From the NCBI GenBank assembly GCA_002269645.1, contig NIVC01003532.1, forward strand, positions 1-64,000: a stretch of 64,000 nucleotides of DNA, read 5' to 3'. This DNA comes from Macrostomum lignano. Its lineage: Eukaryota. Position 1 is the first letter of the stretch. Each line of letters begins with the position of its first letter. Positions 2,706 through 63,265 of the stretch are shown here, in pieces. The position numbers and the translations under genes are program-made. A model generated the notes under the pieces. That model was not told the DNA's origin, ran no database searches, and worked only from the letters and a program-made list of their open reading frames with translations.

Positions 2706-2974
2706 TGCTGATTAAAACTTACGATGGTATACTAACTGAAAATATTCCTTAATTAAATATCGATCAGTTATATTTCTTGACAAAACTAGACTTAATGGAC
2801 TTGCGAAGCGACTGTATGACTCAAGGCATTCGATGAGTTTTCGGCCATAGACAATAAATTGCTAATCCGATTGATCCAGGTGCGCTAATATAATCCATTC
2901 TTCAAAGGGGATCAAGCCATATCTAATGACCGTATTTCTCTGAGGCACAACCACATGCACAGATAACTGCACTA

Positions 2975-6998: not shown

Positions 6999-7188
6999 AT
7001 GATAGCTGCTCTACCACAGCAACTCAGTGATTGGCTCTTCCTCTCAAAATGATCATAGTTAAGAGCTCATAGCTACCCACCTCGTCCAAAAACTCCTAAT
7101 AAAAAAGAGAAACAAAACCAGTCAAGCTCTGCTGCTTGAAGTCCCTCTCGTCACGTGCGCATCATCAGTGAAATTAAGCGAGCAAAAT

Positions 7189-8427
7189 ATGGGCGACAAA
7201 CACTCGCCCGCGGACACCGACAGAGCCTGGCTGTTCGCCCAGCTGTGCGTCAATTTGGCATCAACATTCTCAAACAGCTGCGCAACCCACCTGTTCCTCA
7301 AGCTGTACCGGGCGTCACCCCGATCGGCTTCACTGCTGGGCTTGCTGCTTCTGTCAGCCAGCGAGTTTCTGTTCGACGCTTCCCACCTTACTTTCACCTC
7401 GGTCAACCTGGCAACTGGCGTCTGTCAAGGCGGCAAAACGCCGGATTCGGTTGTCATAGCAACCAATGCGTCATATAACGCTAGCAACGGTACCAGCGAG
7501 GAGAAATTTGAAGCCGATGAGTTTGCCGAGCACTGGGACAGCAGGATGTGGGTCTGCGTGCTGATCTTCGCCCCATCGAACGCGAGCCTGTTTGTGAGGA
7601 ACTGGTGGATCACCTGCTTCACTCTGGCTCGCTGCCTTGTGATTCTGTGCCCGTTCACCGCCAGAACAGTGTTCACCCGGTCAGTGTACAAGCGTTGCTA
7701 TGCGGTGTGCCTGTTGCTAGGCGTCGGATTCACCGTGCTGCGAATATGGTCGGAGTACGCGGCCAGCGCCACAGCACGGAAATTAGCAGTGGTTGTGCAG
7801 GCGCCGATGCCCAGTTTGCTGGTGTTCGCCGCGTCGGTTGTCATGGCAACCGATTTGGCGCGTCTGCGCTGTTGTAAACAAGGCGGCAGTGGCGGCAGTG
7901 GCGGAGGCGGTGGCGGCGATAGCGGTGGCGGTGGCGGAGGCGGCGGAGGTGGCGGAGGTGGTGGCAGCGGCAGCGGAGGCCGCTCGGACTGGACAGCCTG
8001 GCACGCCGGCTCGGAGCACCTGCAGCATCAGCAGCGGCAGCAAAATCTTCAGCAGCAAAAGCGTTTACTCCGCCGTTGGCATAACAACTCCCCAGCAACC
8101 GGATCGCCGTTTCGTAGCGGCGCCCAGCAACAGCTCAGATCGACGGCCGGCACCGTCGGAACGAACGGCGGCGGTGGCAGCGGCGGCCGCAACGTCGGCT
8201 CGAATCGGGTCATGAGGGCGACTATCACCATAGTAACAGTGGCTGTTCTGTTCGTTGTCATGGAAACGCCGTGTAGCATTTTCGTGCTAATTGGAGAAAA
8301 TTCGGCGTTCACGGAGCACCTGAGCAACATGCTGATTGGCACTGACTCCCTGCTAAACTTTGCCATATTTTTGGCCACTAGTTGCACTTTTCGTAAGCAA
8401 TTTCTCGCGCTTTTCCATCGCCAGTGA
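7189..8427 (+). CDS. Class A (rhodopsin-like) GPCR, FMRFamide/srw-type peptide-receptor-like, intronless, with poly-Gly/Gln third intracellular loop
   Basis: Seven hydrophobic segments; TM3 end WWITCFTLARCLVILCPF (ERY equivalent = ARC), TM6 VAVLFVVMETP, TM7 DSLLNFAIF. First ATG at 7189 (the ORF track starts at GTG 7168); AATAAA at 8507. Confidence 0.85.
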   Translation: MGDKHSPADTDRAWLFAQLCVNLASTFSNSCATHLFLKLYRASPRSASLLGLLLLSASEFLFDASHLTFTSVNLATGVCQGGKTPDSVVIATNASYNASNGTSEEKFEADEFAEHWDSRMWVCVLIFAPSNASLFVRNWWITCFTLARCLVILCPFTARTVFTRSVYKRCYAVCLLLGVGFTVLRIWSEYAASATARKLAVVVQAPMPSLLVFAASVVMATDLARLRCCKQGGSGGSGGGGGGDSGGGGGGGGGGGGGGSGSGGRSDWTAWHAGSEHLQHQQRQQNLQQQKRLLRRWHNNSPATGSPFRSGAQQQLRSTAGTVGTNGGGGSGGRNVGSNRVMRATITIVTVAVLFVVMETPCSIFVLIGENSAFTEHLSNMLIGTDSLLNFAIFLATSCTFRKQFLALFHRQ

Positions 8428-29115: not shown

Positions 29116-30909
29116 TCAGTGTAGCGGATGCTGCACTACGGGCTCTCGCATATTGAATGACACGCTTTCAAAGAACGCCTCCGGGTCCTGCGACTGCTTG
29201 CGCATGCGGCGGCTTTCGGTGAGCATGAAGTCGAGGAACAACTCCGATGTGGCAAAGTCATCGCCTCGCTGTCTGAGATGCAGCTCTGTGAACAGTCTCA
29301 CTTGCAGAGCGGAGAATCCGAGCTGAGTGAGCAGTCTCACAACGGGCAGGTCGGCTCTCGCCTTGATGTCTCTGGCCTCGACTCTGAACTCGACTCCAGG
29401 TGTGACTGCGAGAGCCTCGTCTGCGCGACTGCTGCGGACTGCGGACCCGTCGACAGTCGCAGCACCAGCTGATGCAGTTGAGTCCGTCTGTACCAATGCA
29501 GTGTGACGCTGAGCTGAGGCGCCACAAGTCGGGTGCTGCACGGGAGGCGACAGTCGGTGCACTGTCTGTACAAAGTCGCTGCCTCGCTCCAACAACACGT
29601 GAGGACACCGAGGTGACCACCTGGCGTGCTCAACCCACACATCATCGTCGCAGCTCCACTCGCTCATGCAGAGTCCGCAGCTGAAGCAGCAGGTCGCTCT
29701 CTCGGCTTCCGAGTAGAAGAAGCCCGCCTTTGCAAGCAAGTACACTGGCTGCTGAACGAGAGCCGAGTGCAGAGACTGCGACCTCGCTTGGTAGGTCTCG
29801 AACTGTGCGCGTTTGGCAGTCACACTCGATGGATCACTCTCGAGACTGTGTTGCAGAGCTGACAGGTTCGTGAGAGCTCTCTCGGAGCACGCAGATCTCG
29901 CTACGTCGCTCGACACTGGAAGCTGAGGACGCTTCATCATGTCGAAAGCAACCAGCTTATCGTCCACATCGCGTTCTGCATTCGTTCCAAAAGTTGCGCG
30001 TGTCGCCAGCGCCCACTCGTTCAGTCCAGCGAACTCCATCGGTGGTAGCTCAGCGACCAGCTTTATGCTCCAGTCTCCGTTCACCATCACTGCTGCATCA
30101 TCTGCAGTCTGATCACTGCACTGCACTGCTTCTACCAGCTTTGCTGAACTCAAGACTCTTTCCGGCTCTCTGTGATCTCGAGGCACGTTGCCGACCTCGA
30201 CGAACAACACGAACGGACAGGTGGAGAAGTGGCGTCTGTGAGCCTCTCGGACCTGCTCGCCCGCCTCCCAGTCCTTGAGCACACCCTTGCAGAATGCACA
30301 CTTTACTCTGTCCGACTCCTGCAGGTAGAAGAATCCGTCAGCAGCCAGATCCGTCACTGACACCAGGTGAGCCGCTGTGAAGCTGGCATCTGGCAGGTGG
30401 AAAGACTGCCACCTGTTCTCCTCTCGTCTCATGTCCCACAGGTGTTGTGGAATCGAGGCCGGCATTCCACTCGTGTCCCATCGCTGATTGCGGAAGTCCA
30501 GAGTCTGCGGCACGGATGACGCTCTGCCACCAGGTGTGCTGTTGTTGTAGTACCGCAGCACCTTGCTCTTACCTGTCAGTTTTTTCTGCTGACTAATATT
30601 TTGCTCAAGATTTTGCCTAGTCGATCTTTGGATGAGTAGACGAAGTCTCGGAATTTCGACGAGGGCCACTGATATGAGACAATCCCTGAAGTCATTCGTC
30701 CAGCGAATTTCCTGAAAAATTAGTTGCAGCAGTTCCTTATGTCTCGTCTTTGAGACTATGATGAATCCAAATATTTCATTAGCGAAGTCCAATCCCTTTT
30801 GAGAGATAAGTTCTTTTGGAACTGTTTTGGATCGCAGCGATAAAATGTGTCGTTCTGTGGCTCGTATTTCAAATAGGTTGTATTTTGAACGGTTTGTTTT
30901 ACTTTCCAT
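29116..30909 (-). CDS. IAP: IAP copy 1: BIR-BIR-UBA-like, RING domain missing
   Basis: First ATG at 30909. Two C-x2-C-x16-H-x6-C BIR motifs (KCAFCKG...AHRRHFSTC; CCFSCG...EHARWSPRC). Diverges from paralogs after DPEAFF and ends VSFNMREPVVQHPLH*; AATAAA ~13 nt after the stop. Confidence 0.9.
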   Translation of the reverse strand: MESKTNRSKYNLFEIRATERHILSLRSKTVPKELISQKGLDFANEIFGFIIVSKTRHKELLQLIFQEIRWTNDFRDCLISVALVEIPRLRLLIQRSTRQNLEQNISQQKKLTGKSKVLRYYNNSTPGGRASSVPQTLDFRNQRWDTSGMPASIPQHLWDMRREENRWQSFHLPDASFTAAHLVSVTDLAADGFFYLQESDRVKCAFCKGVLKDWEAGEQVREAHRRHFSTCPFVLFVEVGNVPRDHREPERVLSSAKLVEAVQCSDQTADDAAVMVNGDWSIKLVAELPPMEFAGLNEWALATRATFGTNAERDVDDKLVAFDMMKRPQLPVSSDVARSACSERALTNLSALQHSLESDPSSVTAKRAQFETYQARSQSLHSALVQQPVYLLAKAGFFYSEAERATCCFSCGLCMSEWSCDDDVWVEHARWSPRCPHVLLERGSDFVQTVHRLSPPVQHPTCGASAQRHTALVQTDSTASAGAATVDGSAVRSSRADEALAVTPGVEFRVEARDIKARADLPVVRLLTQLGFSALQVRLFTELHLRQRGDDFATSELFLDFMLTESRRMRKQSQDPEAFFESVSFNMREPVVQHPLH

Positions 30910-32861
30910 TATTTTTTGTCGCTCGGTCAAGACAGGTGGAAGATAAAGTGTTCTCTAACTTCGAAAATTTTGGGACTATGATTGACTCACGGTTGGAAAT
31001 CTACAATGAAATGTTTTAGTGCTTTTGCAAAGGACTAAGCAATTCGAGTGGTATATAAATGATACATTTATGTATACTTAGTTATTTTGAGGTTTATTTT
31101 GCTAGATACTTTCCTGATATTTTGAACACGTTCACGACAGTATGTGTACATGCAATTTAAAATTTTGTTTTTGGCAAAAGCAAAGCACAAAAAGGTTATA
31201 GCCGCAAAAGTCAAAACGTCTCGGTTCTTACCTGTATATAGTGTGCTCAAGACAGTTCAAATTTTTAAAAAACATATTTTTTCGATGGATGAGGTGAGGT
31301 GCAGTATTAGGTTTAGTGTTATAGATAGTGTAATTTTTGTTTCCTTACTAATGAATTGTTTTGAAACTAAAAAACAGTGTTCTTAGTTCGATGCAGTTTA
31401 GAGTATTACTAGTAGATAAAATAGTTAGTTGACTTGGGGTGTGAGTGAATCTTCTTGTACAAGAACGGTTTTTATGAACAGGCTCAGTAGAGAAGCAACT
31501 ACCCCAGCCAACTACACTTTATAATCAGTGTTCACTGTTCTTAGCTCGCATTTGCGCACCAAAAGCTATATGCAAACTGTACACGCGTTGGAATGGCCGC
31601 GGTTTGTTCGTGGATTTTTCGCGGATTATTTTGGGATTTCCCAATTTTTACTTCACTGGCTGCAGTGCTAGGGCGTTAATCTCTAATCTAACCATGTGTA
31701 AAAATAATTTTCCCATTCGCCTATAAATATGTGGTGTAGCTGAAGATGGCTTCTCCATGGCATTGCCACGGTTCAACCATAGCCAGTTCGTGCTATAAAA
31801 AGGACTTCTCCGGTAAGTTCTATCTAGATTACTGCAATTATACTCTCGTTTGCGGTACTAATCTGCTTAAGGGTGCAATTCACGCTACTGAGAAATTAAG
31901 GACCTCCACACCAGTTGCTCTGAGAACACTAGCTAGCTACGTGTAGATAGGACGCATTCCCACTTGCTTGTCATGCATTAGGAAAATGATTATCTCTGAT
32001 AAAGAAGTACATAAAAAGTGTAAACTAATCTGTAATATTATTCTCATTGAGAAAAAAACTCTTATTGAAATATTGCATATATTACATTCACATTAAAACT
32101 CGAACGCTTTCTAACAATTTTGCTTTACACAACTTATATCGAGGATATATTATTGCCGTTGCTAAATTGCTCATTTGTCCATTGTTTTGATCGTCCTAAA
32201 AAGAAATTCAGAAGTCGTAATTATTATAGTTAGAGACCAGTCTCATTGCCTGCTGATTTCTAGAAGATTTCTTTGTCTTGTTTTGTTTCAGCTAGCCTAG
32301 AATTAAAGAGAAATTTCCGCGGAAATTCCACGTTATTGCCGGGAGTCGAAAATAGCACTGACGGTATTAGTCTCCAAAACAGCTGATAAAAATAGAGTAC
32401 TGGCAGCGGTGTTTTGCATGGACTAAATACGAGCTATAGACACACAAGCAAGTGTGTACACACCACTTTCGATGACGAAAAATGTGTTTGACTGGTTAAA
32501 AAAGCTGGAAAATTTATCTCATAGATTAGATTAGATTCTTTTAAGGCCACATCCTAGATGTATGATGTATAAAATTACAAAGTTATAACTGTTATATTAG
32601 AAAAATAAATGTGAAACTACATCAAACTAGGCATTAAAAAAAGAAAATACTTGCCAGACCACATCTTAGCTTTCTATGAAAAACTAAGGATCTCTCGAAA
32701 AGCTTTAACAATAGAGTATTAAGCCAAGACCCTTCTATAGGCCACTAAAATCAGTCATTCAAAAACTATACAGTACTAACAGTACCCAACCTTATTCGCA
32801 TAAAACGAACTATCATTTGCAGAAATTTAGCCTGCAGACCGAACAAAGAAGAAGCATCTAC

Positions 32862-34907
32862 ATGTCGACAGAAGTACAAAACCCAAAAAGTTCAAACTTA
32901 ATTAAAAAAGGTACGTCAAAAACAAAAGAGTGCATAAAAACGGCATGTTCAAAAATTAATAGCTATGTGGATGAAATTAGAAACGTCTTCAAACTTACCG
33001 TCCATCTTGTTAAAGAATTCGAGAGCGTTCTCAAAAAAAGAGCATATTATCTCTCAAAAAACATTTCAAATATTTTCTATGAAATTACACATTCTGCACT
33101 GAATGCCACAGATAATATGGACCATATAATAAATTGCATTGAAGAAGAACAACAGATTGCAGACGAAAAGATCCAAAGTCTTTTGTCCGTAGTTTTATCT
33201 GAAATGCAAAAACAGCGACTGCTTGTCATGAAGTCTTCAAACCAAATATCTGACCAACGAATAGTCGAGCACAAAATACAGACAGGCAAGAGCAAGGTAC
33301 TGCGGTACTACAACAACAGCACACCTGGTGGCAGAGCGTCCTCCGTGCCGCAGACTCTGGACTTCCGCAATCAGCGATGGGACACGAGTGGAATGCCGGC
33401 CTCGATTCCACAACACCTTTGGGACATGAGACGAGAGGAGAACAGGTGGCAGTCCTTTCACCTGTCAGATGCCAGCTTCACAGCGGCTCACCTGGTGTCA
33501 GTGACGGATCTGGCTGCTGACGGATTCTTCTACCTGCAGGAGTCGGACAGAGTAAAGTGTGCATTCTGCAAGGGTGTGCTCAAGGACTGGGAGGCGGGCG
33601 AGCAGGTCCGAGAGGCTCACAGACGCCACTTCTCCACCTGTCCGTTCGTTCTGTTCGTCGAGGTCGGCAACGTGCCTCGAGATCACAGAGAGCCGGAAGG
33701 AGCCTCGAGGTCTGCAAAGTTGGTAGAGGCAGTGCAGTGCAGTGATCAGACTGCAGATGATGCAGCAGTGATGGTGAACGGAGACTGGAGCATGAAGCTG
33801 GTCGCTGAGCTACCACCGATGGAGTTCGCTGGACTGAATGAGTGGGCGCTGGCGACACGCGCAACTATTGGAACGAATGCAGAACGCGGTGTGGAGGACG
33901 AGCTGGTCGCAGTCGACATGATGAAGCGTCCTCAGCTTCCAGTGTCGAGCGAAGTAGCGAGATCTGCGTGCTCCGAGAGAGCTCTCACGAACCTGTCCGC
34001 TCTGCAGCACAGTCTCGAGAGTGATCCATCGAGTGTGACTGCCAAACACACACAGTTCGAGACCTACCAAGCGAGGTCGCAGTCTCTGCACTCGGCTCTC
34101 GTTCAGCAGCCAGTGTACTTGCTTGCAAAGGCGGGCTTCTTCTACTCGGATGCCGAGAGAGCGACCTGCTGCTTCAGCTGCGGACTTTGCATGAGCGAGT
34201 GGAGCTGCGACGATGATGTGTGGGTTGAGCACGCCAGGTGGTCACCTCGGTGTCCTCACGTGTTGTTGGAGCGAGGTAGCGACTTTGTGCAGACAGTGCA
34301 CCGACTGTCGCCTCCCGTGCAGCACCCGACTTGTGGCGCCTCAGCTCAGCGTCACACTGCATTGGTACAGACGGACTCAACTGCATCAGCTGGTGCTGCG
34401 ACTGTCGACGGGTCCGCAGTCCGCAGCAGTCGCGCAGACGAGGCTCTCGCAGTCACACCTGGAGTCGAGTTCAGAGTCGAGGCCAGAGACATCAAGGCGA
34501 GAGCCGACCTGCCCGTTGTGAGACTGCTCACTCAGCTCGGATTCTCCGCTCTGCAAGTGAGACTGTTCACAGAGCTGCATCTCAGACAGCGAGGCGATGA
34601 CTTTGCCACATCGGAGTTGTTCCTCGACTTCATGCTCACCGAAAGCCGCCGCATGCGCAAGCAGTCGCAGGACCCGGAGGCGTTCTTCGAGAGCAGGATG
34701 TCTCAGATTCGGGAGTCTCTGAACCAACAGCCGAGACCCCGAGACACAACCGACTGGAAGACGTGCAAGGTGTGCATGGACAAGGAGGTGAACATCATGC
34801 TGCTGGACTGTGGTCACGTGGCCTGCTGCTCAGTGTGCGCCAAGTCGCTGAAGACGTGTCCCATCTGCAGAGCCTTCATTCGTGGGGTGGTATTTGTGCA
34901 AATGTGA
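32862..34907 (+). CDS. IAP: IAP copy 2: unique N-terminus - BIR-BIR-UBA-like-RING
   Basis: First ATG at 32862; two BIRs; C3HC4 RING CKVCMDKEVNIMLLDCGHVACCSVCAKSLKTCPICR; intronless. Confidence 0.93.
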   Translation: MSTEVQNPKSSNLIKKGTSKTKECIKTACSKINSYVDEIRNVFKLTVHLVKEFESVLKKRAYYLSKNISNIFYEITHSALNATDNMDHIINCIEEEQQIADEKIQSLLSVVLSEMQKQRLLVMKSSNQISDQRIVEHKIQTGKSKVLRYYNNSTPGGRASSVPQTLDFRNQRWDTSGMPASIPQHLWDMRREENRWQSFHLSDASFTAAHLVSVTDLAADGFFYLQESDRVKCAFCKGVLKDWEAGEQVREAHRRHFSTCPFVLFVEVGNVPRDHREPEGASRSAKLVEAVQCSDQTADDAAVMVNGDWSMKLVAELPPMEFAGLNEWALATRATIGTNAERGVEDELVAVDMMKRPQLPVSSEVARSACSERALTNLSALQHSLESDPSSVTAKHTQFETYQARSQSLHSALVQQPVYLLAKAGFFYSDAERATCCFSCGLCMSEWSCDDDVWVEHARWSPRCPHVLLERGSDFVQTVHRLSPPVQHPTCGASAQRHTALVQTDSTASAGAATVDGSAVRSSRADEALAVTPGVEFRVEARDIKARADLPVVRLLTQLGFSALQVRLFTELHLRQRGDDFATSELFLDFMLTESRRMRKQSQDPEAFFESRMSQIRESLNQQPRPRDTTDWKTCKVCMDKEVNIMLLDCGHVACCSVCAKSLKTCPICRAFIRGVVFVQM

Positions 34908-41065: not shown

Positions 41066-41520
41066 AACAATAAACTACAACCCCTATAAGCTTTAGAGCT
41101 TTTAGTTTTTGACAGTTGTTCCTAATAACATTTCATTATTTAAAGATCAAATTAAAACTGTTTTAGAGAGAAACGACTTTCAACAAGAGGCTACTGAAGC
41201 ATCGAGATAACAAAATAATAAATTGATAAAAACAACTGCTACACGACTTTTTTCTCCGAGGATTGGTTTGAATCATGAATCATCTCAACTTTCGAAGCGT
41301 GCTTCAGTGGCAATTGGACTCATCTTATTCAACTCAAACGGTCCAAATTCAAAATCAATCCCAGCGACAAGCCGTAGACATCAGCGATGTTGAGCTCACT
41401 AGCAATGCGGTCATGGAAACAGCAGATTTTAATAGAGCTCAATAAACAGACAATACAATATCAAACCCAAGTGTTAAAAATTCATTAGCTGTTGCACTAA
41501 AAGCCATAGCTGACACAGAA

Positions 41521-43233
41521 ATGGCCAAGCAGCGAATGCTCATAGCAGCTCAGCATCGAGTTTCAACATACTTTGGTACACCTGACACGCGACAATTGGT
41601 ACAAACAGGTAAGAGCAAGGTGCTGCGGTACTACAAAAACAGCACACCTGGTGGAAGAGCGTCCTCCGTGCCGCAGACTCTGGACTTCCGCAATCAGCGA
41701 TGGGACACGAGTGGAATGCCCGCCTCGATTCCACAACACCTGTGGGACATGAGACGAGAGGAGAACAGGTGGCAGTCCTTCCACCTGCCAGATGCCAGCT
41801 TCACAGCGGCTCACCTGGTGTCCGTGACGGATCTGGCTGCTGACGGATTCTTCTACCTGCAGGAGTCGGACAGAGTAAAGTGTGCATTCTGCAAGGGTGT
41901 GCTCAAGGACTGGGAGGCGGGCGAGCAGGTCCGAGAGGCTCACAGACGCCACTTCTCCACCTGTCCGTTCGTGCTGTTCGTCGAGGTCGGCAACGTGCCT
42001 CGAGACCACAGAGAGCCGGAAGGAGTCTCGAGGTCAGCAAAGCTGGTAGAGGCAGTGCAATGCTGTGATCAGACTGCAGATGATGATGCAGCAGTGATGG
42101 TGAACGGAGACTGGAGCATGAATCTGGTCGCTGAGCTACCACCGATGGAGTTCGCTGGACTGAACGAGTGGGCGCTGGCGACACGCGCAACTATTGGAAC
42201 GAATGCAGAACGCGTTGTGGACGATAAGCTGGTTGCTTTCGACATGATGAAGGGTCCTCAGCTTCCAGTGTCGAGTGAGGTAGCGAGATCTGCGTGCTCC
42301 GAGAGAGCTCTCACGAACCTGTCCGCTCTGCAGCACAGTGTCGAGAGTGATCCATCGAGTGTGACTGCCAAACACGCACAGTTCGAGACCTACCAAGCGA
42401 GGTCGCAGTCTCTGCACTCGGCTCTCGTTCAGCAGCCAGTGTACTTGCTTGCAAAGGCGGGCTTCTTCTACTCGGAAGCCGAGAGAGCGACCTGCTGCTT
42501 CAGCTGCGGACTCTGCATGAGCGAGTGGAGCTGCGACGATGATGTGTGGGTTGAGCACGCCAGGTGGTCACCTCGGTGTCCTCACGTGTTGTTGGAGCGA
42601 GGTAGCGACTTTGTACAGGCGGTGCATCGACTGTCGCCTCCCGTGCAGCACCCGACTTGTGGCGCCTCTGCTCAGCGTCACACTGCATTGGTACAGACGG
42701 ACTCAACTGCATCAGCAGGTGCTGCGACTGTCGACGGGTCCGCAGTCCGCAGCAGTCGCGCAGACGAGGCTCTCGCAGTCACTCCTGGAGTCGAGTTTAG
42801 AGTCGAGGCCAGAGACATCAAGGCGAGAGCCGACCTGCCCGTTGTGAGACTGCTCACTCAACTCGGATTCTCCGCCCTGCAAGTGAGACTGTTCACAGAG
42901 CTGCATCTCAGACAGCGAGGCGATGACTTTGCCACATCGGAGCTGTTCCTCGACTTCATGCTCACCGAGAGCCGCCGCATGCGCAAGCAGTCGCAGGACC
43001 CGGAGGCGTTCTTCGAGAGCAGGATGTCTCAGATTCGGGAGTCTCTGAACCAACAGCCGAGACACCGAGACACAACCGACTGGAAGACGTGCAAGGTGTG
43101 CATGGACAAGGAGGTGAACATCATGCTGCTGGACTGTGGTCACGTGGCCTGCTGCTCAGTGTGCGCCAAGTCGCTGAAGACCTGCCCCATCTGCAGGGCC
43201 TTCATCCGTGGCTCAGTGTTTATTAAGATGTAA
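41521..43233 (+). CDS. IAP: IAP copy 3: BIR-BIR-UBA-like-RING; upstream in-frame extension from ATG 41275 is broken by TAA at 41443
   Basis: 570-aa ORF with two BIRs and a C3HC4 RING; upstream frame homologous to the copy 4 N-terminus. Confidence 0.9.
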   Translation: MAKQRMLIAAQHRVSTYFGTPDTRQLVQTGKSKVLRYYKNSTPGGRASSVPQTLDFRNQRWDTSGMPASIPQHLWDMRREENRWQSFHLPDASFTAAHLVSVTDLAADGFFYLQESDRVKCAFCKGVLKDWEAGEQVREAHRRHFSTCPFVLFVEVGNVPRDHREPEGVSRSAKLVEAVQCCDQTADDDAAVMVNGDWSMNLVAELPPMEFAGLNEWALATRATIGTNAERVVDDKLVAFDMMKGPQLPVSSEVARSACSERALTNLSALQHSVESDPSSVTAKHAQFETYQARSQSLHSALVQQPVYLLAKAGFFYSEAERATCCFSCGLCMSEWSCDDDVWVEHARWSPRCPHVLLERGSDFVQAVHRLSPPVQHPTCGASAQRHTALVQTDSTASAGAATVDGSAVRSSRADEALAVTPGVEFRVEARDIKARADLPVVRLLTQLGFSALQVRLFTELHLRQRGDDFATSELFLDFMLTESRRMRKQSQDPEAFFESRMSQIRESLNQQPRHRDTTDWKTCKVCMDKEVNIMLLDCGHVACCSVCAKSLKTCPICRAFIRGSVFIKM

Positions 43234-45649: not shown

Positions 45650-47045
45650 TCTGCAGAATATAGCTCGTACCGTATATTCTGTGGCTAAGCTCTGCAGAAT
45701 ATACTGTATATTCTGTGGCTAGGCTCTGCAGAATATACTGTATATTCTGTGGCTAGGCTCTGCAGAATATACTGTATATTCTGTGGCTAAGCTCTGCAGA
45801 ATATACTGTATATTCTGTGGCTAGGCTCTGCAGAATATACTGTATATTCTGTGGCTAAGCTCTGCAGAATATACTGTATATTCTGTGGCTAAGCTCTGCA
45901 GAATATACTGTATATTCTGTGGCTAGGCTCTGCAGAATATACTGTATATTCTGTGGCTAAGCTCTGCAGAATATACTGTATATTCTGTGGCTAAGCTCTG
46001 CAGAATATACTGTATATTCTGTGGCTAGGCTCTGCAGAATATACTGTATATTCTGTGGCTAAGCTCTGCAGAATATACTGTATATTCTGTGGCTAGGCTC
46101 TGCAGAATATACTGTATATTCTGTGGCTAAGCTCTGCAGAATATACTGTACATTCTGTGGCTAAGCTCTGCAGAATATACTGTATATTCTGTGGTTAAGC
46201 TCTGCAGAATATACTGTATATTCTGTGGCTAAGCTCTGCAGAATATACTGTATATTCTGTGGCTAGGCTCTGCAGAATATACTGTATATTCTGTGGCTAA
46301 GCTCTGCAGAATATACTGTATATTCTGTGGCTAAGCTCTGCAGAATATACTGTATATTCTGTGGCTAAGCTCTGCAGAATATACTGTATATTCTGTGGCT
46401 AAGCTCTGCAGAATATACTGTATATTCTGTGGCTAAGCTCTGCAGAATATACTGTATATTCTGTGGCTAGGCTCTGCAGAATATACTGTATATTCTGTGG
46501 CTAGGCTCTGCAGAATATACTGTATATTCTGTGGCTAAGCTCTGCAGAATATACTGTATATTCTGTGGCTAAGCTCTGCAGAATATACTGTATATTCTGT
46601 GGCTAGGCTCTGCAGAATATACTGTATATTCTGTGGCTAAGCTCTGCAGAATATACTGTATATTCTGTGGCTAGGCTCTGCAGAATATACTGTATATTCT
46701 GTGGCTAGGCTCTGCAGAATATACTGTATATTCTGTGGCTAAGCTCTGCAGAATATACTGTATATTCTGTGGCTAAGCTCTGCAGAATATACTGTATATT
46801 CTGTGGCTAAGCTCTGCAGAATATACTGTATATTCTGTGGCTAAGCTCTGCAGAATATACTGTATATTCTGTGGCTAAGCTCTGCAGAATATACTGTATA
46901 TTCTGTGGCTAAGCTCTGCAGAATATAGCTCGTACCGTATATTCTGTGGCTAAGCTCTGCAGAATATAGCTCGTACCGTATATTCTGTGGCTAAGCTCTG
47001 CAGAATATAGCTCGTACCGTATATTCTGTGGCTAAGCTCTGCTAA
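45650..47045. repeat. 34-bp tandem array, each unit containing a 21-bp palindrome (cagaatatac-t-gtatattctg), ~40 copies
   Basis: Unit gctctgcagaatatactgtatattctgtggcta(a/g); no unique spacers, so not CRISPR. Confidence 0.95.
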
Positions 47046-47821
47046 TAAGCTGGAAATAAGCTCTGCTAATTTCACTGCAGTACGCTGATACTTGTGGACG
47101 TCTCACTAAATTGTAAATAAAGCCAGTTTTTTGTCACCAATCTTTGGTAAAGCGCGAGCATCGAGAACGCTCACTTGGATTAAATTGTTCCTTCGACTTT
47201 CTAGAGCCCTCATTGGTCTCTGGCTTCGTTCTTTCTTCGGTTTTGATGAATTGTTCGAATCTCCCAGCCGTGTCTCAGAGAGCTTACAGTAGAGATCGCG
47301 CTTTAAGTAAAGTCCTTCCGTGCCTTTAGCACAAATAATCGTAAAGAAACTCCACGTGTTTTTGATTGTTCCAGAGATATTTCTAAAGTAGCTAAGAAGC
47401 GAGAGAGCACGCCGAGGGCCGACGCTTGTGTCTATTTTATAGATGCCATGAGACGGAGACGCTATCGGCAGCCGCTGGAGGGGGTGGATTCTCTCTTGGT
47501 TAGCAACGGCCTCAGCTGGCACTGCAGGTAAACAGACGCAAGCAATTATAGATTTTTACATTGAACTAGCAGGTTGCTGCAGGCGAGATAAATTATTTGA
47601 TATTATAGTTACTTATAGCGAGGTTGAGTCGTCAGAGCGATTAGGGGAGCTCAATCAGGAGACGTCTCTTTTTCTTTTGCGCATATCAGACCCCCACTGA
47701 TCCATGCAGCCTTCGGTTTTCAGCGCGATCAGGTGAGCCGTATGCTTCTCGTTCTTCAGTCGGCCAAATTCCACACTGGCGTCAGCACTGATCTCGCCTG
47801 TCAACCGTTAATTGCTTGTCT

Positions 47822-48337
47822 GTTGTTGTTGTTGTTGTTATTTCCGGCCGGTCAGTCCGGGGGGGGGGGGGGGCGGGTCTGAGCCCCGACCTCCTTCAAG
47901 AAGTCTATCACCTGCCTGCTGATGTTGCTGAGCGTCTGGAGGCTCGGGTTTTCGCCGAGGTGCCGGTCTCTGGCCTGTTGGTGAGAGCGGCAAACCTTGA
48001 TCAGGTGCTCCAGGTCCTCATTGGCTTCGCCGCAGTGCGGGTACGTAGGGCTGTCGGCTTGGCCAATGCGGTGACGCTACTGCTGGAGCAAGGGGGAGTG
48101 ACCAGTTCGGAGTTGGGCGTCATGTCTGGGGAGAGATCTCTTGATTTTGGCGCCGTCCCCGGTGGTTAGGCGGTGAGTGATGCAGTGCGGGTCCGCTCGG
48201 TAGACGGCGGTGAATTGGGACTTGGCTGATCGGTCGATCGCCGCTTTGGCCGCGGCCAGGCTGATTTTTGCGTGAGTCTGGTCAAGAGCCGATCCAGCTT
48301 TGGCGGTGGCGTCCGCCAGGTCGTTGAGGCCGACTGA
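47822..48337 (-). mobile_element. 5'-truncated I-clade non-LTR retrotransposon (RNase H end + zinc-finger C-terminus, (CAA)n tail)
   Basis: Minus frame NDLADATAKAG...QLRTGHSPLLQQ*RHRIGQADSP...CGEANEDLEHLIKVC...VIDFLKEVG; 14-bp TSD ttaattgcttgtct at 47808-47821 and 48372-48385. Confidence 0.85.
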
Positions 48338-48376
48338 GCCCGGTTAGCTCAGTCGGTAGAGCATGAGACTCTTAAT
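48338..48376 (+). pseudogene. tRNA-Lys(CTT) 5' half (positions 1-39) captured inside the LINE insertion
   Basis: gcccggttagctcagtcggtagagcatgagactcttaat matches eukaryotic tRNA-Lys-CTT from the 5' end through the anticodon loop (CTT at 48371); T-arm and 3' acceptor strand absent. Confidence 0.85.
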
Positions 48377-50532
48377 TGCTTGTCTCGCCCGCCATGTCGG
48401 AGGTATCTCGTCATCTTGATTTGCCTGACAATGCAACGGCGCGACTGCTGGCTCTGCTGCCTGACTGCAGAAAAGCTCTGCCTTGGCTGACATTGATGTC
48501 AACTCGCTTGGCCTGCAGTGCAGGTATCTGGAATGAAGGGTGATTTTTTAATTCTTATGTACGAGTATCACACAATCGTGTCCCCCTACGGACTCTAGCC
48601 ATAGTCGTTCCATTTACGAGCCTTATCTTTTCACTCCCTTTACACGTAAATTGTTCCTGCATCTAGCCTAGGTTATCCAGCTTTGGTGTGTGGTTATTTT
48701 ACAGGTACTTTGTTTAATTTATGTGGCGTTTCTTGTGGATTTCTCAGCCCTTTCAGACTTTTGTGACCCTCGAATTATAGCATTCCAATCTCAGAGGTCA
48801 ATTGTCAAAGAATAGTCCTGCGGACTATACTCATATTCGCGTCAACTCAGTCACGGAAGTATCGCAGCGGTGAGATGGTATGGTATAGCGACAGTATTAA
48901 GCATTTAACCCTCTAGCAAGCTTTACTAATTAAGTGGTTTTTAGAATGATTGGATATTGAAGGCAAAAGAAGGCAATATGCGTATATAGCGATGAATTAC
49001 TATAGAAACGATGAAAAAGGAAAATACACAATTGTTGAGCGAGATGCTCTTTAGCTACGAGTATATGGTCAATAAAAAGTTATAATTTCTGCGTGCAGGC
49101 GTACAACACAGAGACCAATAAATAATTAACAAGTGCAGGGCGGTCGACAAGTTGCAATCAATGGCCACTATAGAAGTCCTTTGTAGTCTATAGAAGTTCT
49201 AGTGGTCCTTGGTTGCAATTTACGTTACATGTACAAATATGTTAAGCTAACTGATCGGTACTGTCTTGTTATCGCAAGACCTTTAGACAAAGACGGTAAC
49301 GGAGAAGTAACAAAGACAGCTTAAATGAACACGCTTAGTTCGCCCAGAGGCTGCATGAGTATCTATACAAATTTCGTTAAATTTTTCACCTTGGCTAACC
49401 TAAATCCTGTCTGCCCAGCATTCTAAAGACGGTATCAACTCACACAACTCAGCCAGGAACACAGCTACCCTCCCCCTGAGCTTGACGAACTCAGCAGCGG
49501 AGCAGCCGAAGCTCCTCGTTGCACCCCAGTTTGTTCAAATCTCCCTAGACTCTCGGAAATTCCGGCACCGATTTAAACTCACATCAACATGGAACTCATT
49601 TGACATCATGGCAATATATACAACTAGTATAGTACGCCTGGTAGCATTTGATGTTGAGGTAGGTAGGCAAAGACAGGTACGTCGTGCTTGATCACCACTA
49701 GCTAGCTAACAGCACTCGACTCACCCTTCGGCACCCAGCCAGAGCCAAGACCAAAATAAGCCCCCGTCTTAAAAAAGTAATTCATCTAACTTTGGTAATT
49801 GGTAATCTAAATGTTGGCCTACTACGGGTGCGGGGTGCCTACCTGTCTTTGCGGGGGGGGGGGGACTTTGCCTACCTACCTCAACTCAACCTCAATCGCA
49901 TCGCTCAATGCTACCAGTGGAACCAGCTGTACTGTACTAGTTGTATTCATAGCATAGCTAAATTATTTATTACTACGTTAGGCCTAATTCAAACTTTAGT
50001 TATTTTTAACATCTTTCGATCCAATGCTTGTGTTCAGTATTTGTAGTGTTGTGTGTGGAATGAAATGTCATTATCGCCTTATCGGGTTTTTTTATCCAAT
50101 TTCAATTATGTTTAGGCCTAGCCATAATTTTTAGGGCCTAGGGCCTAGTCTAAGTTTTAAATTAAAAATAAAATAGACCATACATAAATTAATGAATTAA
50201 GTTATTGTAGCCCAGCTCACAGCGAAATAAGTCCTAGTCCATGACATTTAATAGGCTAGCTTTTCCAAAAAGCTGCTTAGGATATATTCTAAAAATAGGC
50301 TATAGTTTTTGTCTGTCTTTCAATCTAAAAATAGATAGAGTTTAGCATAGGTTAAAAATAGGTCTATGAACTATGGTGTAGCCTAAACCTAATTGAATGA
50401 TTATTATATTGTCATTGTACTTTTACTTGTATTGGAAGGGTCTTACTTAAGCAGGCTAGGCCTGTAACAATGACAGGCTATGTTAAGGCCTAGGTAAAGC
50501 CTATAGGCCCTAGGCCTAGAGCAAGATAGGAG

Positions 50533-58367: not shown

Positions 58368-60175
58368 TGGATTACTGCACTTGATAAACCAAGGACTACT
58401 GCACTTGATAAACCAAGGACTACTGCACTTGATAAACCAAGGACTACTGCACTTGATAAACCAAGGATTACTGCACTTGATAAACCAAGGACTACTGCAC
58501 TTGATAAACCAAGGACTACTGCACTTGATAAACCAAGGATTACTGCACTTGATAGGCTAAGGATTACTGCGCTTGATAAACCAAGGACTACTGCACTTGA
58601 TAAACCAAGGACTACTGCACTTGATAAACCAAGGACTACTGCACTTGATAAACCAAGGATTACTGCACTTGATAGGCTAAGGATTAATGCACTTTATAAA
58701 CCAAGGACTACTGCACTTGATAAACCAAGGACTACTGCACTTGATAAATCAAGGACTACTGCACTTGATAAACCAAGGATTACTGCACTTGATAAACCAA
58801 GGATTACTGCACTTGATAAACCAAGGACTACTGCACTTGATAAACCAAGGACTACTGCACTTGATAAACCAAGGATTACTGCACTTGATAGGCTAAGGAT
58901 TACTGCGCTTGATAAACCAAGGACTACTGCACTTGATAAACCAAGGATTACTGCACTTGATAGGCTAAGGATTACTGCGCTTGATAAACCAAGGACTACT
59001 GCACTTGATAAACCAAGGATTACTGCACTTGATAAGCTAAGGATTACTGCACTTGATAAACCAAGGACTACTGCACTTGATAAACCAAGGACTACTGCAC
59101 TTGATAAACCAAGGACTACTGCACTTGATAAACCAAGGATTACTGCACTTGATAAACCAAGGACTACTGCACTTGATAAACCAAGGACTACTGCACTTGA
59201 TAAACCAAGGATTACTGCACTTGATAGGCTAAGGATTACTGCGCTTGATAAACCAAGGACTACTGCACTTGATAAACCAAGGACTACTGCACTTGATAAA
59301 CCAAGGACTACTGCACTTGATAAACCAAGGATTACTGCACTTGATAGGCTAAGGATTAATGCACTTTATAAACCAAGGACTACTGCACTTGATAAACCAA
59401 GGACTACTGCACTTGATAAATCAAGGACTACTGCACTTGATAAACCAAGGATTACTGCACTTGATAAACCAAGGATTACTGCACTTGATAAACCAAGGAC
59501 TACTGCACTTGATAAACCAAGGACTACTGCACTTGATAAACCAAGGATTACTGCACTTGATAGGCTAAGGATTACTGCGCTTGATAAACCAAGGACTACT
59601 GCACTTGATAAACCAAGGATTACTGCACTTGATAGGCTAAGGATTACTGCGCTTGATAAACCAAGGACTACTGCACTTGATAAACCAAGGATTACTGCAC
59701 TTGATAAGCTAAGGATTACTGCACTTGATAAACCAAGGACTACTGCACTTGATAAACCAAGGACTACTGCACTTGATAAACCAAGGACTACTGCACTTGA
59801 TAAACCAAGGATTACTGCACTTGATAGGCTAAGGATTAATGCACTTGATAAACCAAGGATTACTGCACTTGATAAACCAAGGACTACTGCACTTGATAAA
59901 CCAAGGACTACTGCACTTGATAAATCAAGGACTACTGCACTTGATAAACCAAGGATTACTGCACTTGATAAACCAAGGATTACTGCACTTGATAAACCAA
60001 GGACTACTGCACTTGATAAACCAAGGACTACTGCACTTGATAAACCAAGGATTACTGCACTTGATAGGCTAAGGATTACTGCGCTTGATAAACCAAGGAC
60101 TACTGCACTTGATAAACCAAGGATTACTGCACTTGATAAGCTAAGGATTACTGCACTTGATAGAGCAAGGATCAT
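58368..60175. repeat. 24-bp minisatellite (ccaaggactactgcacttgataaa), ~75 copies, with a 672-bp higher-order period
   Basis: Rare variant ggattaatgcactttata recurs at ~58681 and ~59353. Confidence 0.95.
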
Positions 60176-60324
60176 TGCACTAGATAATAAAATGATTCTT
60201 GCACTATCTTAGAAGCGGATAATTGCGCTGAAAAAAAAGAGATTATTGCGCTAGCTGAGACATGGATTATTGCACAACCTGAGAAAGCGATTATTTCATT
60301 AGCGGAGGAAATATTTGCACTAGC

Positions 60325-60915: not shown

Positions 60916-61279
60916 AGCAATAGCTAAATTTAGATAGTTACAAGTGTAGACAATGATACAATCAAGTGTAGCCTAAATAAATAAACTTTAACATTGATAA
61001 TAGCTTAGAAAAAGAGCTAATTGTCTTTAATTCTTTAGTATAGCATATTGGTGAATATCTAGATATCTAGATATATCATACTTGTTTCATGTCCATGTTG
61101 CGCTCCTATTGGCTGAAAGGCTTATCTGTTTGATAGTTCTGAATTAATGTACTGACCCATTTCAGTGTAAACTTGCTAACCAAGTAAATATAAAAAAAAA
61201 TTCAGACACCTGCAGCCACAAACTACGCTGTCAAATCATTTTGCTGCATACCGCTTTGTAGCAGTTCAATTTGTGAAAA

Positions 61280-63265
61280 ATGACGAACTTAATGTCAGTT
61301 AGTAATTGGCTAACAGACTCCGCCGTCAATCAACCGCAAAATGTAGTACTAAATAACACATTCGCCACATCAGAGAGGGATTCCGATATATTAGACTATG
61401 AGATTACGAGCAATGCTGTCATACCAACTGAGGCATTGATACCAATATTACCTACTCCATGCAACTTAGCAAACAATAGTACGAAAGACTCCTTAGCTGT
61501 TGCACTGAAAGCCATAGCTGACACTGAAATGACTAAGCAGCGAATGCTCATAGCAGCTCAGCTTCGAGATTCAACGCAAATTCAACTTCAGTACTTCAGT
61601 ACACCTGACACGCGACAATTGGTACAAACAGGTAAGAGCAAGGTGCTGCGGTACTACAACAACAGCACACCTGGTGGCAGAGCGTCCTCCGTGCCGCAGA
61701 CTCTAGACTTCCGCAATCAGCGATGGGACACGAGTGGAATGCCGGCCTCGATTCCACAACACCTGTGGGACATGAGACGAGAGGAGAACAGGTGGCAGTC
61801 CTTCCACCTGCCGGATGCCAGCTTCACAGCGGCTCACCTGGTGTCAGTGACGGATCTGGCTGCTGACGGATTCTTCTACCTGCAGGAGTCGGACAGAGTA
61901 AAGTGTGCATTCTGCAAGGGTGTGCTCAAGGACTGGGAGGCGGGCGAGCAGGTCCGAGAGGCTCACAGACGCCACTTCTCCACCTGTCCGTTCGTGCTGT
62001 TCGTCGAAGTCGGCAACGTGCCTCGAGATCACAGAGAGCCAGAAAGAGTCTTGAGTTCAGCAAAAATAGTAGAGGCAGTGCAATGCAGTGATCAGACTGC
62101 AGATGATGCAGCAGTGATGGTGAACAGAGACTGGAGCATGAATCTGGTCGCTGAGCTACCACCGATGGAGTTCGCTGGACTGAACGAGTGGGCGCTGGCG
62201 ACACGCGCAACTATTGGAACGAATGCAGAACGCGTAGTGGACGACGAGCTGGTCGCTTTCAACATGATGAAGCGTCCTCAGCTTCCAGTGTCGAGCGAAG
62301 TAGCGAGATCTGCGTGCTCCGAGAGAGCGCTCACGAACCTGTCCGCTCTGCAGCACAGTCTCGAGAGTGAGCCATCGAGTGTGACTGCCAAACACGCACA
62401 GTTCGAGACCTACCAAGCGAGGTCGCAGTCTCTGCACTCGGCTCTCGTTCAGCAGCCAGTGTACTTGCTTGCAAAGGCGGGCTTCTTCTACTCGGAAGCC
62501 GAGAGAGCGACCTGCTGCTTCAGCTGCGGACTCTGCATGAGCGAGTGGAGCTGCGACGATGATGTGTGGGTTGAGCACGCCAGGTGGTCACCTCGATGTC
62601 CTCACGTGTTGTTGGAGCGAGGCAGCGACTTTGTACAGGCGGTGCATCGACTGTCGCCTCCCGTGCAGCACCCGACTTGTGGTGCTTCTGCTCAGCGTCA
62701 CACTGCATTGGTACAGACGGAATCAACTGCATCAGCTGGTGCTGCGACTGTCGACGGGTCCGCCGCCACTACTGCAGTCCGCAGCAGTCGCGCAGACGAG
62801 GCTCTCGCAGTCACTCCTGGAGTCGAGTTCAGAGTCGAGGCCAGAGACATCAAGGCGAGAGCCGACCTGCCCGTTGTGAGACTGCTCACTCAGCTCGGAT
62901 TCTCCGCTCTGCAAGTGAGACTGTTCACAGAGCTGCATCTCAGACAGCGAGGCGATGACTTTGCCACATCGGAGCTGTTCCTCGACTTCATGCTCACCGA
63001 GAGCCGCCGCATGCGCAAGCAGTCGCAGGATCCGGAGGCGTTCTTCGAGAGCAGGATGTCTCAGATTCGAGACTCTCTAAACCAACAGCCTAGACGCCGA
63101 GACACAACCGACTGGAAGACGTGCAAGGTGTGCATGGACAAGGAGGTGAACATCATGCTGCTGGACTGTGGTCACGTGGCCTGCTGCTCAGTGTGCGCCA
63201 AGTCGCTGAAGACGTGCCCCATCTGCAGGGCCTTTATTCGCGGCTCCCTATTTTTTCGTGAGTGA
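61280..63265 (+). CDS. IAP: IAP copy 4: N-terminal extension - BIR-BIR-UBA-like-RING
   Basis: 661-aa intronless ORF; two BIRs; C3HC4 RING; 4-aa insertion (ATTA) relative to the other copies. Confidence 0.93.
   Translation: MTNLMSVSNWLTDSAVNQPQNVVLNNTFATSERDSDILDYEITSNAVIPTEALIPILPTPCNLANNSTKDSLAVALKAIADTEMTKQRMLIAAQLRDSTQIQLQYFSTPDTRQLVQTGKSKVLRYYNNSTPGGRASSVPQTLDFRNQRWDTSGMPASIPQHLWDMRREENRWQSFHLPDASFTAAHLVSVTDLAADGFFYLQESDRVKCAFCKGVLKDWEAGEQVREAHRRHFSTCPFVLFVEVGNVPRDHREPERVLSSAKIVEAVQCSDQTADDAAVMVNRDWSMNLVAELPPMEFAGLNEWALATRATIGTNAERVVDDELVAFNMMKRPQLPVSSEVARSACSERALTNLSALQHSLESEPSSVTAKHAQFETYQARSQSLHSALVQQPVYLLAKAGFFYSEAERATCCFSCGLCMSEWSCDDDVWVEHARWSPRCPHVLLERGSDFVQAVHRLSPPVQHPTCGASAQRHTALVQTESTASAGAATVDGSAATTAVRSSRADEALAVTPGVEFRVEARDIKARADLPVVRLLTQLGFSALQVRLFTELHLRQRGDDFATSELFLDFMLTESRRMRKQSQDPEAFFESRMSQIRDSLNQQPRRRDTTDWKTCKVCMDKEVNIMLLDCGHVACCSVCAKSLKTCPICRAFIRGSLFFRE

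What the first reader, a model, noticed from the sequence alone, without database searches (positions are those of the whole stretch)
47808..48385. LINE insertion that captured an inverted tRNA-Lys 5' half: footprint of twin priming in trans
Seen: between two copies of a 14-bp TSD (ttaattgcttgtct) lie a minus-strand LINE 3' fragment with a (CAA)n tail and, in the opposite orientation, tRNA-Lys(CTT) nt 1-39. The tRNA anticodon-loop TTAAT overlaps the first 5 nt of the right TSD. At the junction an inverted copy of the D-arm forms a hairpin (ccgactgagc-ccggtta-gctcagtcgg, 48330-48356). Known: in twin priming the second nicked strand primes a second cDNA, normally on the same LINE RNA. Inference: here the bottom-strand end (...ATTAA-3') annealed to the tRNA anticodon loop, copied to the tRNA 5' end, folded back for ~8 nt and was joined to the LINE cDNA. 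This is a one-step route to tRNA-LINE chimeras, the raw material of new SINEs.
Basis: partly seen in the sequence, partly recalled or inferred. Interest (0 to 1): 0.72.

Follow-up and report, generated by a model that had tools for sequence, protein, structure and literature searches.

The report
LINE insertion with captured inverted tRNA-Lys half
An old, truncated LINE retrotransposon insertion carries the first 34-39 bases of the genome's own tRNA-Lys(CTT) in the opposite orientation inside the same target-site duplication, a real and neatly preserved footprint of a side-reaction already catalogued for human LINE-1, and not a route to a new SINE.

Summary
A perfect 14-bp target-site duplication (47808-47821 and 48372-48385) encloses three parts. 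They are a minus-strand, 5'-truncated LINE 3' end with an (AAC)6 tail, a 7-10 nt inverted copy of the tRNA D-arm, and tRNA-Lys(CTT) nt 1-39 on the plus strand.

The tRNA piece is 39/39 identical to the genome's tRNA-Lys(CTT) genes. It starts at mature nt 1, and its last 5 nt (TTAAT) coincide with the start of the duplication.

Other copies of the LINE family run through the junction without any tRNA. Diverged paralogues of the flank cross the site with neither LINE nor tRNA. The chimera occurs on three contigs, all with the same flanks and duplication, so it is one event that was later duplicated, not a mobile family.

The second-strand nick end (...ATTAA-3') primed reverse transcription on a tRNA, in other words twin priming on a foreign RNA, followed by a short snap-back.

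The same architecture (5' tRNA halves antisense to LINE-1, inside TSDs) was published for 21 human loci (PMC13174262). This is therefore a new member of a known kind, in a different LINE type that encodes RNase H.

The SINE-origin claim fails. The tRNA is antisense to the LINE tail, lacks box B, and never amplified.

The parts
47808..47821 (.). Left copy of the 14-bp target-site duplication, TTAATTGCTTGTCT. Its 3' end on the + strand (...GTCT-3') is the inferred primer of first-strand LINE cDNA.
   Evidence: (D4), 49: two exact copies in 64 kb, 0.04 expected by chance.
47822..47839 (-). LINE 3' tail, (AAC)6 on the LINE strand.
   Evidence: Other family copies carry the same type of tail.
47840..48330 (-). 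5'-truncated LINE 3' fragment (~490 nt). It covers the end of the RNase H domain, the CCHC region, the ORF stop at 47852-47854 and a 12-nt 3' UTR. A premature in-frame stop lies at 48077-48079.
   Evidence: blastx 48% identity, E=7e-39, to residues 802-959 of a related RT/RNase H ORF. (RVT_1, RNase_H, zf-RVT). (91-93% identity to other genomic copies that continue past 48330).
48330..48339 (-). Inverted copy of tRNA D-arm nt 10-19, CCGACTGAGC on the + strand. Base 48330 is shared with the LINE, and 48338-48339 with tRNA nt 1-2. Inferred snap-back synthesis at the 3' end of the tRNA cDNA.
   Evidence: I6; hairpin z = -4.2; absent from the LINE family.
48338..48376 (+). tRNA-Lys(CTT) nt 1-39: acceptor 5' strand, D-arm, anticodon stem 5' strand and anticodon loop. 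It is antisense to the LINE, and nt 35-39 overlap the right duplication copy.
   Evidence: 39/39 identity to 12 tRNA-Lys(CTT) genes, starting at mature nt 1; every other genomic hit to this 5' half is a full 73-nt gene.
48372..48385 (.). Right copy of the target-site duplication. On the - strand its 3' end ...ATTAA-3' is the inferred primer that annealed to tRNA nt 35-39 (UUAAU).
   Evidence: After nt 39 the genes read CTCAGGG, whereas the window reads TGCTTGT, which is target sequence.

Best explanation
This is a single target-primed reverse transcription event by an RNase H-encoding LINE with an (AAC)n tail.

Inferred sequence of events:
1. The + strand was nicked after ...TTGTCT. That 3' end primed cDNA on the LINE RNA tail, and synthesis stopped about 510 nt in (5' truncation).
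2. The - strand was nicked 14 bp away, leaving ...AGACAAGCAATTAA-3'.
3. Instead of priming on the first cDNA, this end annealed through ATTAA to UUAAU (nt 35-39) in the anticodon loop of a processed tRNA-Lys(CTT), or of a long 5' fragment of it. A reverse transcriptase extended it to tRNA nt 1.
4. The new 3' end (...GGGC-3') folded back on the GC of its own D-arm copy and was extended 8 nt (TCAGTCGG).
5. It was then joined to the end of the LINE cDNA with a 1-nt overlap.

Repair filled in both 14-bp gaps and produced the duplication. The locus was later duplicated, or persists as diverged haplotypes, giving three copies.

Shown: the anatomy, the identity and exact ends of the tRNA piece, the single origin, the absence of tRNA from the LINE family, and the paralogous empty sites.

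Inferred: the order of events, which polymerase made the snap-back, and whether the template was an intact tRNA or a fragment.
For: - Both parts lie inside one exact 14-bp duplication.
- The tRNA is antisense to the LINE and abuts the 5'-side duplication copy, as twin priming requires.
- tRNA and duplication overlap by 5 nt. This is about 1 in 1000 by chance for one junction, my own arithmetic (4^-5).
- The piece begins at mature nt 1, whereas the 12 gene leaders all end in AA or CA and differ from the window. The template was therefore processed RNA, not genomic DNA.
- LINE copies on four other contigs read straight through the breakpoint.
- Paralogues at 74-77% identity cross the site colinearly without LINE or tRNA.
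- Only three copies exist, all with identical flanks. Insert and flanks have diverged alike: 100-98.8% against C199 and 98-92% against C10.
- All 19 other genomic matches to the 5' half are full tRNA genes.
- An ordinary insertion of the same family has an 11-bp duplication.
- Precedent: 21 human tRNA/LINE-1 chimeras, mostly antisense 5' halves, with 9-19 bp TSDs in the eight cases checked, attributed to twin priming (PMC13174262).
- Snap-back 5' junctions have been observed experimentally for R2 (PMC11331408).
Against:
- In mature tRNA-Lys, A37 normally carries t6A (general tRNA knowledge). That would weaken the 5-bp primer-template duplex, so the template may have been hypomodified, or the overlap may reflect end joining rather than priming.
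- No allelic or orthologous empty site was found. Only paralogues at 74-77% identity serve as empty sites.
- The snap-back seed is only 2 bp.
- The internal junction has a 1-nt overlap, so it does not reveal which pathway joined the two cDNAs.
- I could not screen other LINE insertions of this genome for similar captures.
Confidence: 0.7

Rival explanations
1. End-joining capture. A free cDNA of the tRNA 5' half, made elsewhere (for example by self-primed or mis-primed reverse transcription), was ligated into the double-strand break left by abortive LINE integration. The joining would be microhomology-mediated (polymerase theta-type), which also produced the templated snap-back insertion.
For: Microhomologies of 5, 2 and 1 nt at the three junctions, together with an inverted templated insertion, are typical of alternative end joining (general knowledge). 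The anatomy is compatible with this.
Against: It needs an extra unexplained step: a primer that started the tRNA cDNA exactly at nt 34-39. Priming by the target end explains both the start point and the overlap in one step. The orientation would be free under capture, whereas the human catalogue shows a strong antisense bias.
Confidence: 0.13
2. Two tRNA templating events. The first-strand LINE cDNA switched template from the LINE RNA to a tRNA-Lys at G19 and copied nt 19-10. A second cDNA, twin-primed on another tRNA-Lys, then paired with it through the terminal GC.
For: It gives exactly the same final sequence. Template switching of LINE reverse transcriptases to small RNAs is documented for the U6/L1 chimeras (PMC4476161, PMC6789731).
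Against: It needs two independent uses of the same tRNA species and a stop after 10 nt. A snap-back of a single cDNA is more parsimonious and has experimental precedent.
Confidence: 0.07
3. 5' transduction or a mobile chimera. A source locus with a truncated LINE next to an antisense tRNA-Lys gene was transcribed and retrotransposed in trans, and the present copy is a 5'-truncated daughter.
For: The insert occurs three times in the genome.
Against: All three copies share flanks and the duplication, so there is no copy with other flanks. The tRNA piece ends at mature nt 1 and continues into an inverted D-arm rather than any gene leader. All other 5'-half matches are plain full-length genes.
Confidence: 0.03
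4. A pre-existing tRNA pseudogene at the target, or two sequential insertions.
For: None beyond the adjacency of the two parts.
Against: The tRNA lies between the two duplication copies and overlaps one of them. The left copy is preceded by CAACCG, not by tRNA sequence. Paralogous sites lack the tRNA.
Confidence: 0.02

Closest known systems
tRNA/LINE-1 chimeric insertions in the human genome (Cell Genomics 2026, PMC13174262; n = 21, including tRNA-Lys-AAG nt 1-37 antisense to L1PA17)
   Same: A half-length 5' tRNA piece (about nt 1-37), antisense to a 5'-truncated LINE. Both parts lie within one target-site duplication of 9-19 bp. The tRNA 5' end faces the LINE. Twin priming is the proposed mechanism.
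   Different: The LINE here is not L1. It encodes RNase H and a C-terminal CCHC region and ends in (AAC)n rather than poly(A), and the host is not a mammal. This copy also shows a 5-nt overlap between anticodon loop and duplication, and a snap-back hairpin. A term search of the paper's supplementary files found no mention of microhomology, and in my searches of its text I saw no discussion of either feature.
Classical twin priming (LINE-1 5' inversions; Ostertag and Kazazian 2001, cited from memory)
   Same: The second-strand nick end primes a second reverse transcription. The result is two oppositely oriented segments inside one duplication, joined internally with little or no homology.
   Different: In classical twin priming both cDNAs come from the same LINE RNA. 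Here the second template is a cellular tRNA.
U6/L1 and other sense-oriented chimeric retrocopies (template switching or RtcB ligation; PMC4476161, PMC6789731)
   Same: A small cellular RNA is fused to the 5' end of a truncated LINE within one duplication.
   Different: Those small RNAs lie in the same orientation as the LINE. Here the orientation is opposite, which rules out simple template switching of the first-strand cDNA and rules out RNA ligation.
Snap-back 5' junctions of R2-mediated insertions (PMC11331408)
   Same: Reverse-complemented sequence of the cDNA itself is added at the cDNA 3' end before junction formation.
   Different: Those were observed for engineered R2 templates in human cells. 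Here the feature is inferred from a natural fossil and sits on a tRNA cDNA.
tRNA-derived SINEs with LINE-derived 3' tails
   Same: They contain tRNA sequence and LINE 3'-end sequence in one short element.
   Different: A SINE has the tRNA head (boxes A and B) in the same orientation as the LINE tail and is multi-copy. Here the tRNA is antisense, box B is missing, and there was no amplification.

Membership tests
Target-primed (TPRT) LINE insertion | Target-site duplication flanking the whole insert | tested here: met
   An exact 14-bp duplication, with 0.04 matches expected by chance in the window.
Target-primed (TPRT) LINE insertion | Family-specific 3' end and tail abutting one duplication copy, with variable 5' truncation | tested here: met
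   The (AAC)6 tail and conserved 3' end are shared with copies that are truncated at other points.
Target-primed (TPRT) LINE insertion | Empty site with a single copy of the duplicated sequence | tested here: inconclusive
   No allelic empty site was found in the assembly or in metagenomes. Paralogues at 74-77% identity cross the site colinearly without any insert.
Twin-priming product | 5' segment inverted relative to the 3' segment, both inside one duplication | tested here: met
   The tRNA is on the + strand and the LINE on the - strand, both between 47821 and 48372.
Twin-priming product | Complementarity between the second-strand 3' end and the start of the inverted segment | tested here: met
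   TTAAT is shared by tRNA nt 35-39 and the first 5 nt of the duplication.
Twin-priming product | Both cDNAs copied from the same LINE RNA (classical definition) | tested here: not met
   The inverted segment is tRNA-Lys(CTT), which is absent from the LINE family. This makes it a heterologous variant.
tRNA/LINE-1 chimeric insertion class (PMC13174262) | Half-length 5' tRNA fragment, antisense, with its 5' end at the LINE junction | tested here: met
   tRNA nt 1-39, antisense, with nt 1 facing the LINE. The class is described.
tRNA/LINE-1 chimeric insertion class (PMC13174262) | The LINE partner is L1 (poly(A) tail, TT/AAAA endonuclease motif) | tested here: not met
   The tail is (AAC)n, the ORF carries RNase H and CCHC domains, and the first-strand nick site is ...TGTCT|CGCC.
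tRNA-derived SINE | Pol III boxes A and B | tested here: not met
   Only nt 1-39 are present. The box B region (nt 52-62 of the genes shown) is missing.
tRNA-derived SINE | tRNA head and LINE 3' tail in the same orientation | tested here: not met
   They lie on opposite strands.
tRNA-derived SINE | Many copies, each with its own duplication | tested here: not met
   There are three copies, all with the same flanks and the same duplication.

The most novel reading that the evidence does not exclude
Heterologous twin priming on tRNA may be a conserved side-reaction of target-primed reverse transcription across distant LINE clades: mammalian L1 and this RNase H-bearing, (AAC)n-tailed LINE of a non-mammalian genome. 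The 5-nt overlap with nt 35-39 would then show that the template still contained the whole anticodon loop. The second-strand end would have primed inside the loop of an intact tRNA, or of a fragment cut 3' of nt 39, rather than on a classical 5' tRNA half cut at nt 33-35 as proposed for the human loci.
Probability: 0.35. Interest if true: 0.45.

Novelty: new member of a known kind. Interest (0 to 1): 0.3.

Why it matters
This locus is a clean, base-resolution example of a LINE integration intermediate using a cellular tRNA as a second template. It extends a phenomenon catalogued only in the human genome, for LINE-1, to another LINE type and another animal lineage.

The junction details add mechanistic hints that the human catalogue does not discuss. 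These are the exact mature 5' end, the 5-nt pairing with the anticodon loop, and the snap-back.

It has no functional consequence visible here. It does not support a one-step origin of SINEs.

Tried and rejected
- ARAGORN and Rfam at gathering threshold found no tRNA in the window. This is expected for a half molecule; identity was established by alignment to the genome's genes instead.
- I searched the genome for an empty allele with the joined flanks. Only filled copies and diverged paralogues turned up. An exact-match scan of metagenome contigs for the empty junction gave nothing.
- I tried to fetch a full-length copy of the same LINE subfamily and more loci. As a result the LINE clade could be described only by its domains, using a related family at 48-58% amino-acid identity. 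A genome-wide screen of other LINE 5' junctions for captured tRNA pieces was not possible.
- All close copies examined are 5'-truncated and decayed.
- Rejected on the evidence: tRNA as part of the LINE consensus; a mobile chimera or SINE family; a pre-existing tRNA pseudogene (position relative to the duplication; paralogues); an assembly artefact (three diverged copies); and sense-oriented template switching or RNA ligation (wrong orientation).
Full report
**Observation**

- The 14-mer TTAATTGCTTGTCT lies at 47808-47821 and 48372-48385. These are its only two occurrences in the 64-kb window, even allowing one mismatch. The chance expectation is 0.04.
- Directly right of the left copy comes (GTT)6, which is (AAC)6 on the minus strand.
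- About 490 nt follow that, on the minus strand, encode the C-terminal ~160 residues of a LINE ORF. This stretch runs from the end of the RNase H domain (N-D-x-A-D) through a CCHC region to the stop. It shows 48% identity (E=7e-39) to residues 802-959 of a related long ORF of the same genome that carries RVT_1, RNase_H and zf-RVT domains.
- The fragment carries one premature stop (48077-48079), so the copy is decayed.
- At 48338-48376 the plus strand reads GCCCGGTTAGCTCAGTCGGTAGAGCATGAGACTCTTAAT.
- An exact 10-nt inverted repeat (48330-48339 and 48347-48356) forms a hairpin at the LINE/tRNA junction. Folded as DNA it gives dG -14.4 kcal/mol, z = -4.2.

**Identity of the tRNA piece**

The genome (G000, 764 Mb, 5269 contigs) holds 19 full-length tRNA-Lys(CTT) genes that match this 5' half. 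ARAGORN confirmed twelve of them.

Their nt 1-39 are 39/39 identical to window 48338-48376. After nt 39 the genes read CTCAGGG, whereas the window reads TGCTTGT, which is target sequence.

Upstream of nt 1 the twelve genes have varied leaders ending in AA or CA. The window instead has ...CCGACTGA, the inverted D-arm. The captured piece therefore starts at the mature, RNase P-processed 5' end. This points to an RNA template and not to genomic DNA.

Only nt 3-34 are unambiguous. Nt 1-2 (GC) are shared with the inverted arm, and nt 35-39 (TTAAT) are shared with the duplication.

**Is the tRNA part of the LINE, or a mobile chimera?**

A search of the whole genome with the 550-nt insert gave three full-length hits: the window (C3532), C199 and C10. 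It also gave about 15 partial hits to the LINE part only, plus the tRNA genes.

The three full hits share their flanks and the duplication:

| Copy compared with the window | Flank identity | Insert identity |
|---|---|---|
| C199 | 99.5-100% | 98.8-100% |
| C10 | 92-98% | 95-96% |

(Values.) The three copies therefore represent one insertion that was later duplicated, or that is kept as haplotype contigs.

In the other LINE copies (C397, C2732, C1215, C3208) the sequence runs straight through the breakpoint...GTCGTTGAGGC|GGAGTCCAGCGTGTCC.... The window instead reads ...GTCGTTGAGGC|CGACTGAGCCCGG.... The tRNA is thus not part of the family.

**Empty site**

No allelic empty site exists in the assembly or in metagenome contigs.

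Four diverged paralogues of the flank (C2671, C2189, C3834, C1300; 74-77% identity) align colinearly across the insertion point. They have one copy of the duplicated segment and neither LINE nor tRNA. This is weaker than an allele, but it points the same way.

An ordinary insertion of the same family (C397, also present on C2732) has an 11-bp duplication and a plain truncated 5' junction.

**Mechanism**

The LINE RNA is the minus strand. The first-strand cDNA is therefore plus-strand sequence, primed by ...TTGTCT-3' at 47821 and extended rightwards to about 48330.

A second nick 14 bp away on the minus strand leaves ...AGACAAGCAATTAA-3'. The last five bases of that end are complementary to U35-U39 of the tRNA. 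Extension on the tRNA to nt 1 gives exactly the minus-strand sequence of 48371-48338.

The next eight minus-strand bases (TCAGTCGG) are what results if the new 3' end ...GGGC folds back on the GC of its own D-arm copy and is extended. The join to the LINE cDNA has a 1-nt overlap.

It accounts for the orientation, for both ends of the tRNA piece, for the overlap and for the hairpin, using a single tRNA molecule.

A 5-nt overlap is expected about once in 1000 junctions by chance (my arithmetic, 4^-5).

If the overlap reflects pairing, the template still carried nt 35-39. That would make it an intact tRNA or a fragment cut 3' of the loop. One caveat from general tRNA knowledge is that A37 of tRNA-Lys is normally t6A, which pairs poorly.

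**Rivals**

- End-joining capture of a preformed tRNA cDNA would fit the microhomologies. It leaves the cDNA start point unexplained.
- A model with two separate tRNA templating events gives the same sequence but is less economical.
- 5' transduction from a source locus is disfavoured. There are no copies with other flanks, and the boundary sits exactly at mature nt 1.
- A pre-existing tRNA pseudogene is excluded by the position of the duplication.
- Sense-type template switching and RNA ligation (the U6/L1 routes) are excluded by the orientation.

**Comparison with what is known**

A full-text search found [quoted passage not shown] (PMC13174262). That paper reports 21 human tRNA/LINE-1 chimeras. 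Most carry the 5' half (nt 1-37), most are antisense to L1, and 9-19 bp duplications were found in the eight cases checked. The authors explicitly attribute them to twin priming.

Its Table S3 even lists tRNA-Lys-AAG nt 1-37 antisense to an L1PA17. In at least two rows the coordinates of the duplication and the tRNA overlap by 3 nt.

Snap-back 5' junctions are documented experimentally for R2 (PMC11331408).

The present locus is therefore a new member of a known kind. What differs is the LINE, which encodes RNase H and has an (AAC)n tail and so is not L1, and the non-mammalian host. I did not determine the organism. The window carries a tandem cluster of intronless BIR-RING genes and large minisatellites. 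The junction detail is also unusually explicit.

**The SINE claim**

This claim is not supported, for three reasons.

- The tRNA piece is antisense to the LINE tail, so transcription from its box A would run away from the tail.
- The box B region is absent.
- The chimera never amplified.

**Limits**

Because of that I could neither recover a full-length element of the same subfamily nor screen other LINE 5' junctions for similar captures.

**Verdict**

The phenomenon itself is already published for human L1. Interest is modest.

Noticed in passing
window 29116-30954 (-), 32715-34907 (+), 41446-43233 (+), 61277-63265 (+): Four near-identical long open frames without introns, each with two BIR domains and a C-terminal RING finger (IAP-like). 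This is a tandemly expanded inhibitor-of-apoptosis gene cluster, and the insertion lies between two of its members.
   Followed up: partly
window 18257-25072, 58369-60187 and 45668-47042: Very large minisatellites. A 24-bp unit repeats about 285 times (6.8 kb), another 24-bp unit about 76 times, and a 34-bp unit about 40 times. The last array ends about 770 bp left of the insertion.
   Followed up: no
window 47859-47874, compared with L002 and L003: The poly-G run inside the LINE 3' end (it encodes a proline run) differs in length among the three copies of the locus: about 15 G in the window, 9 in C199 and 6 in C10.
   Followed up: no
L003 (C10:1208637-1212190), around locus position 2030: The C10 copy has a 2-nt insertion (GA) inside the D-arm of the captured tRNA piece. 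This breaks the hairpin, so the stem is not under selection. The C10 copy also lacks about 260 bp of the right flank relative to the window.
   Followed up: partly
G000 contigs C3532, C199 and C10: A region of at least ~20-35 kb around the insertion exists in three copies: 99.5% identity (C199) and 92-98% identity (C10). A second paralogous marker lies 24, 34 and 20 kb downstream respectively. Whether these are haplotype contigs or segmental duplications was not resolved.
   Followed up: partly
G000:C446, C2314 and C3116: Six tRNA-Lys(TTT)-like 5' halves occur as close pairs, 5-13 kb apart on three contigs, which suggests tandem tRNA gene clusters. Several tRNA-Lys(CTT) genes also sit in pairs on one contig (C1156, C2428, C300).
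   Followed up: no
window 1440-2711 (-) and 7063-8427 (+): An alpha/beta-hydrolase ORF with a long polyglutamine stretch. Nearby is a 454-aa ORF with long glycine and glutamine runs that has no Pfam match.
   Followed up: no
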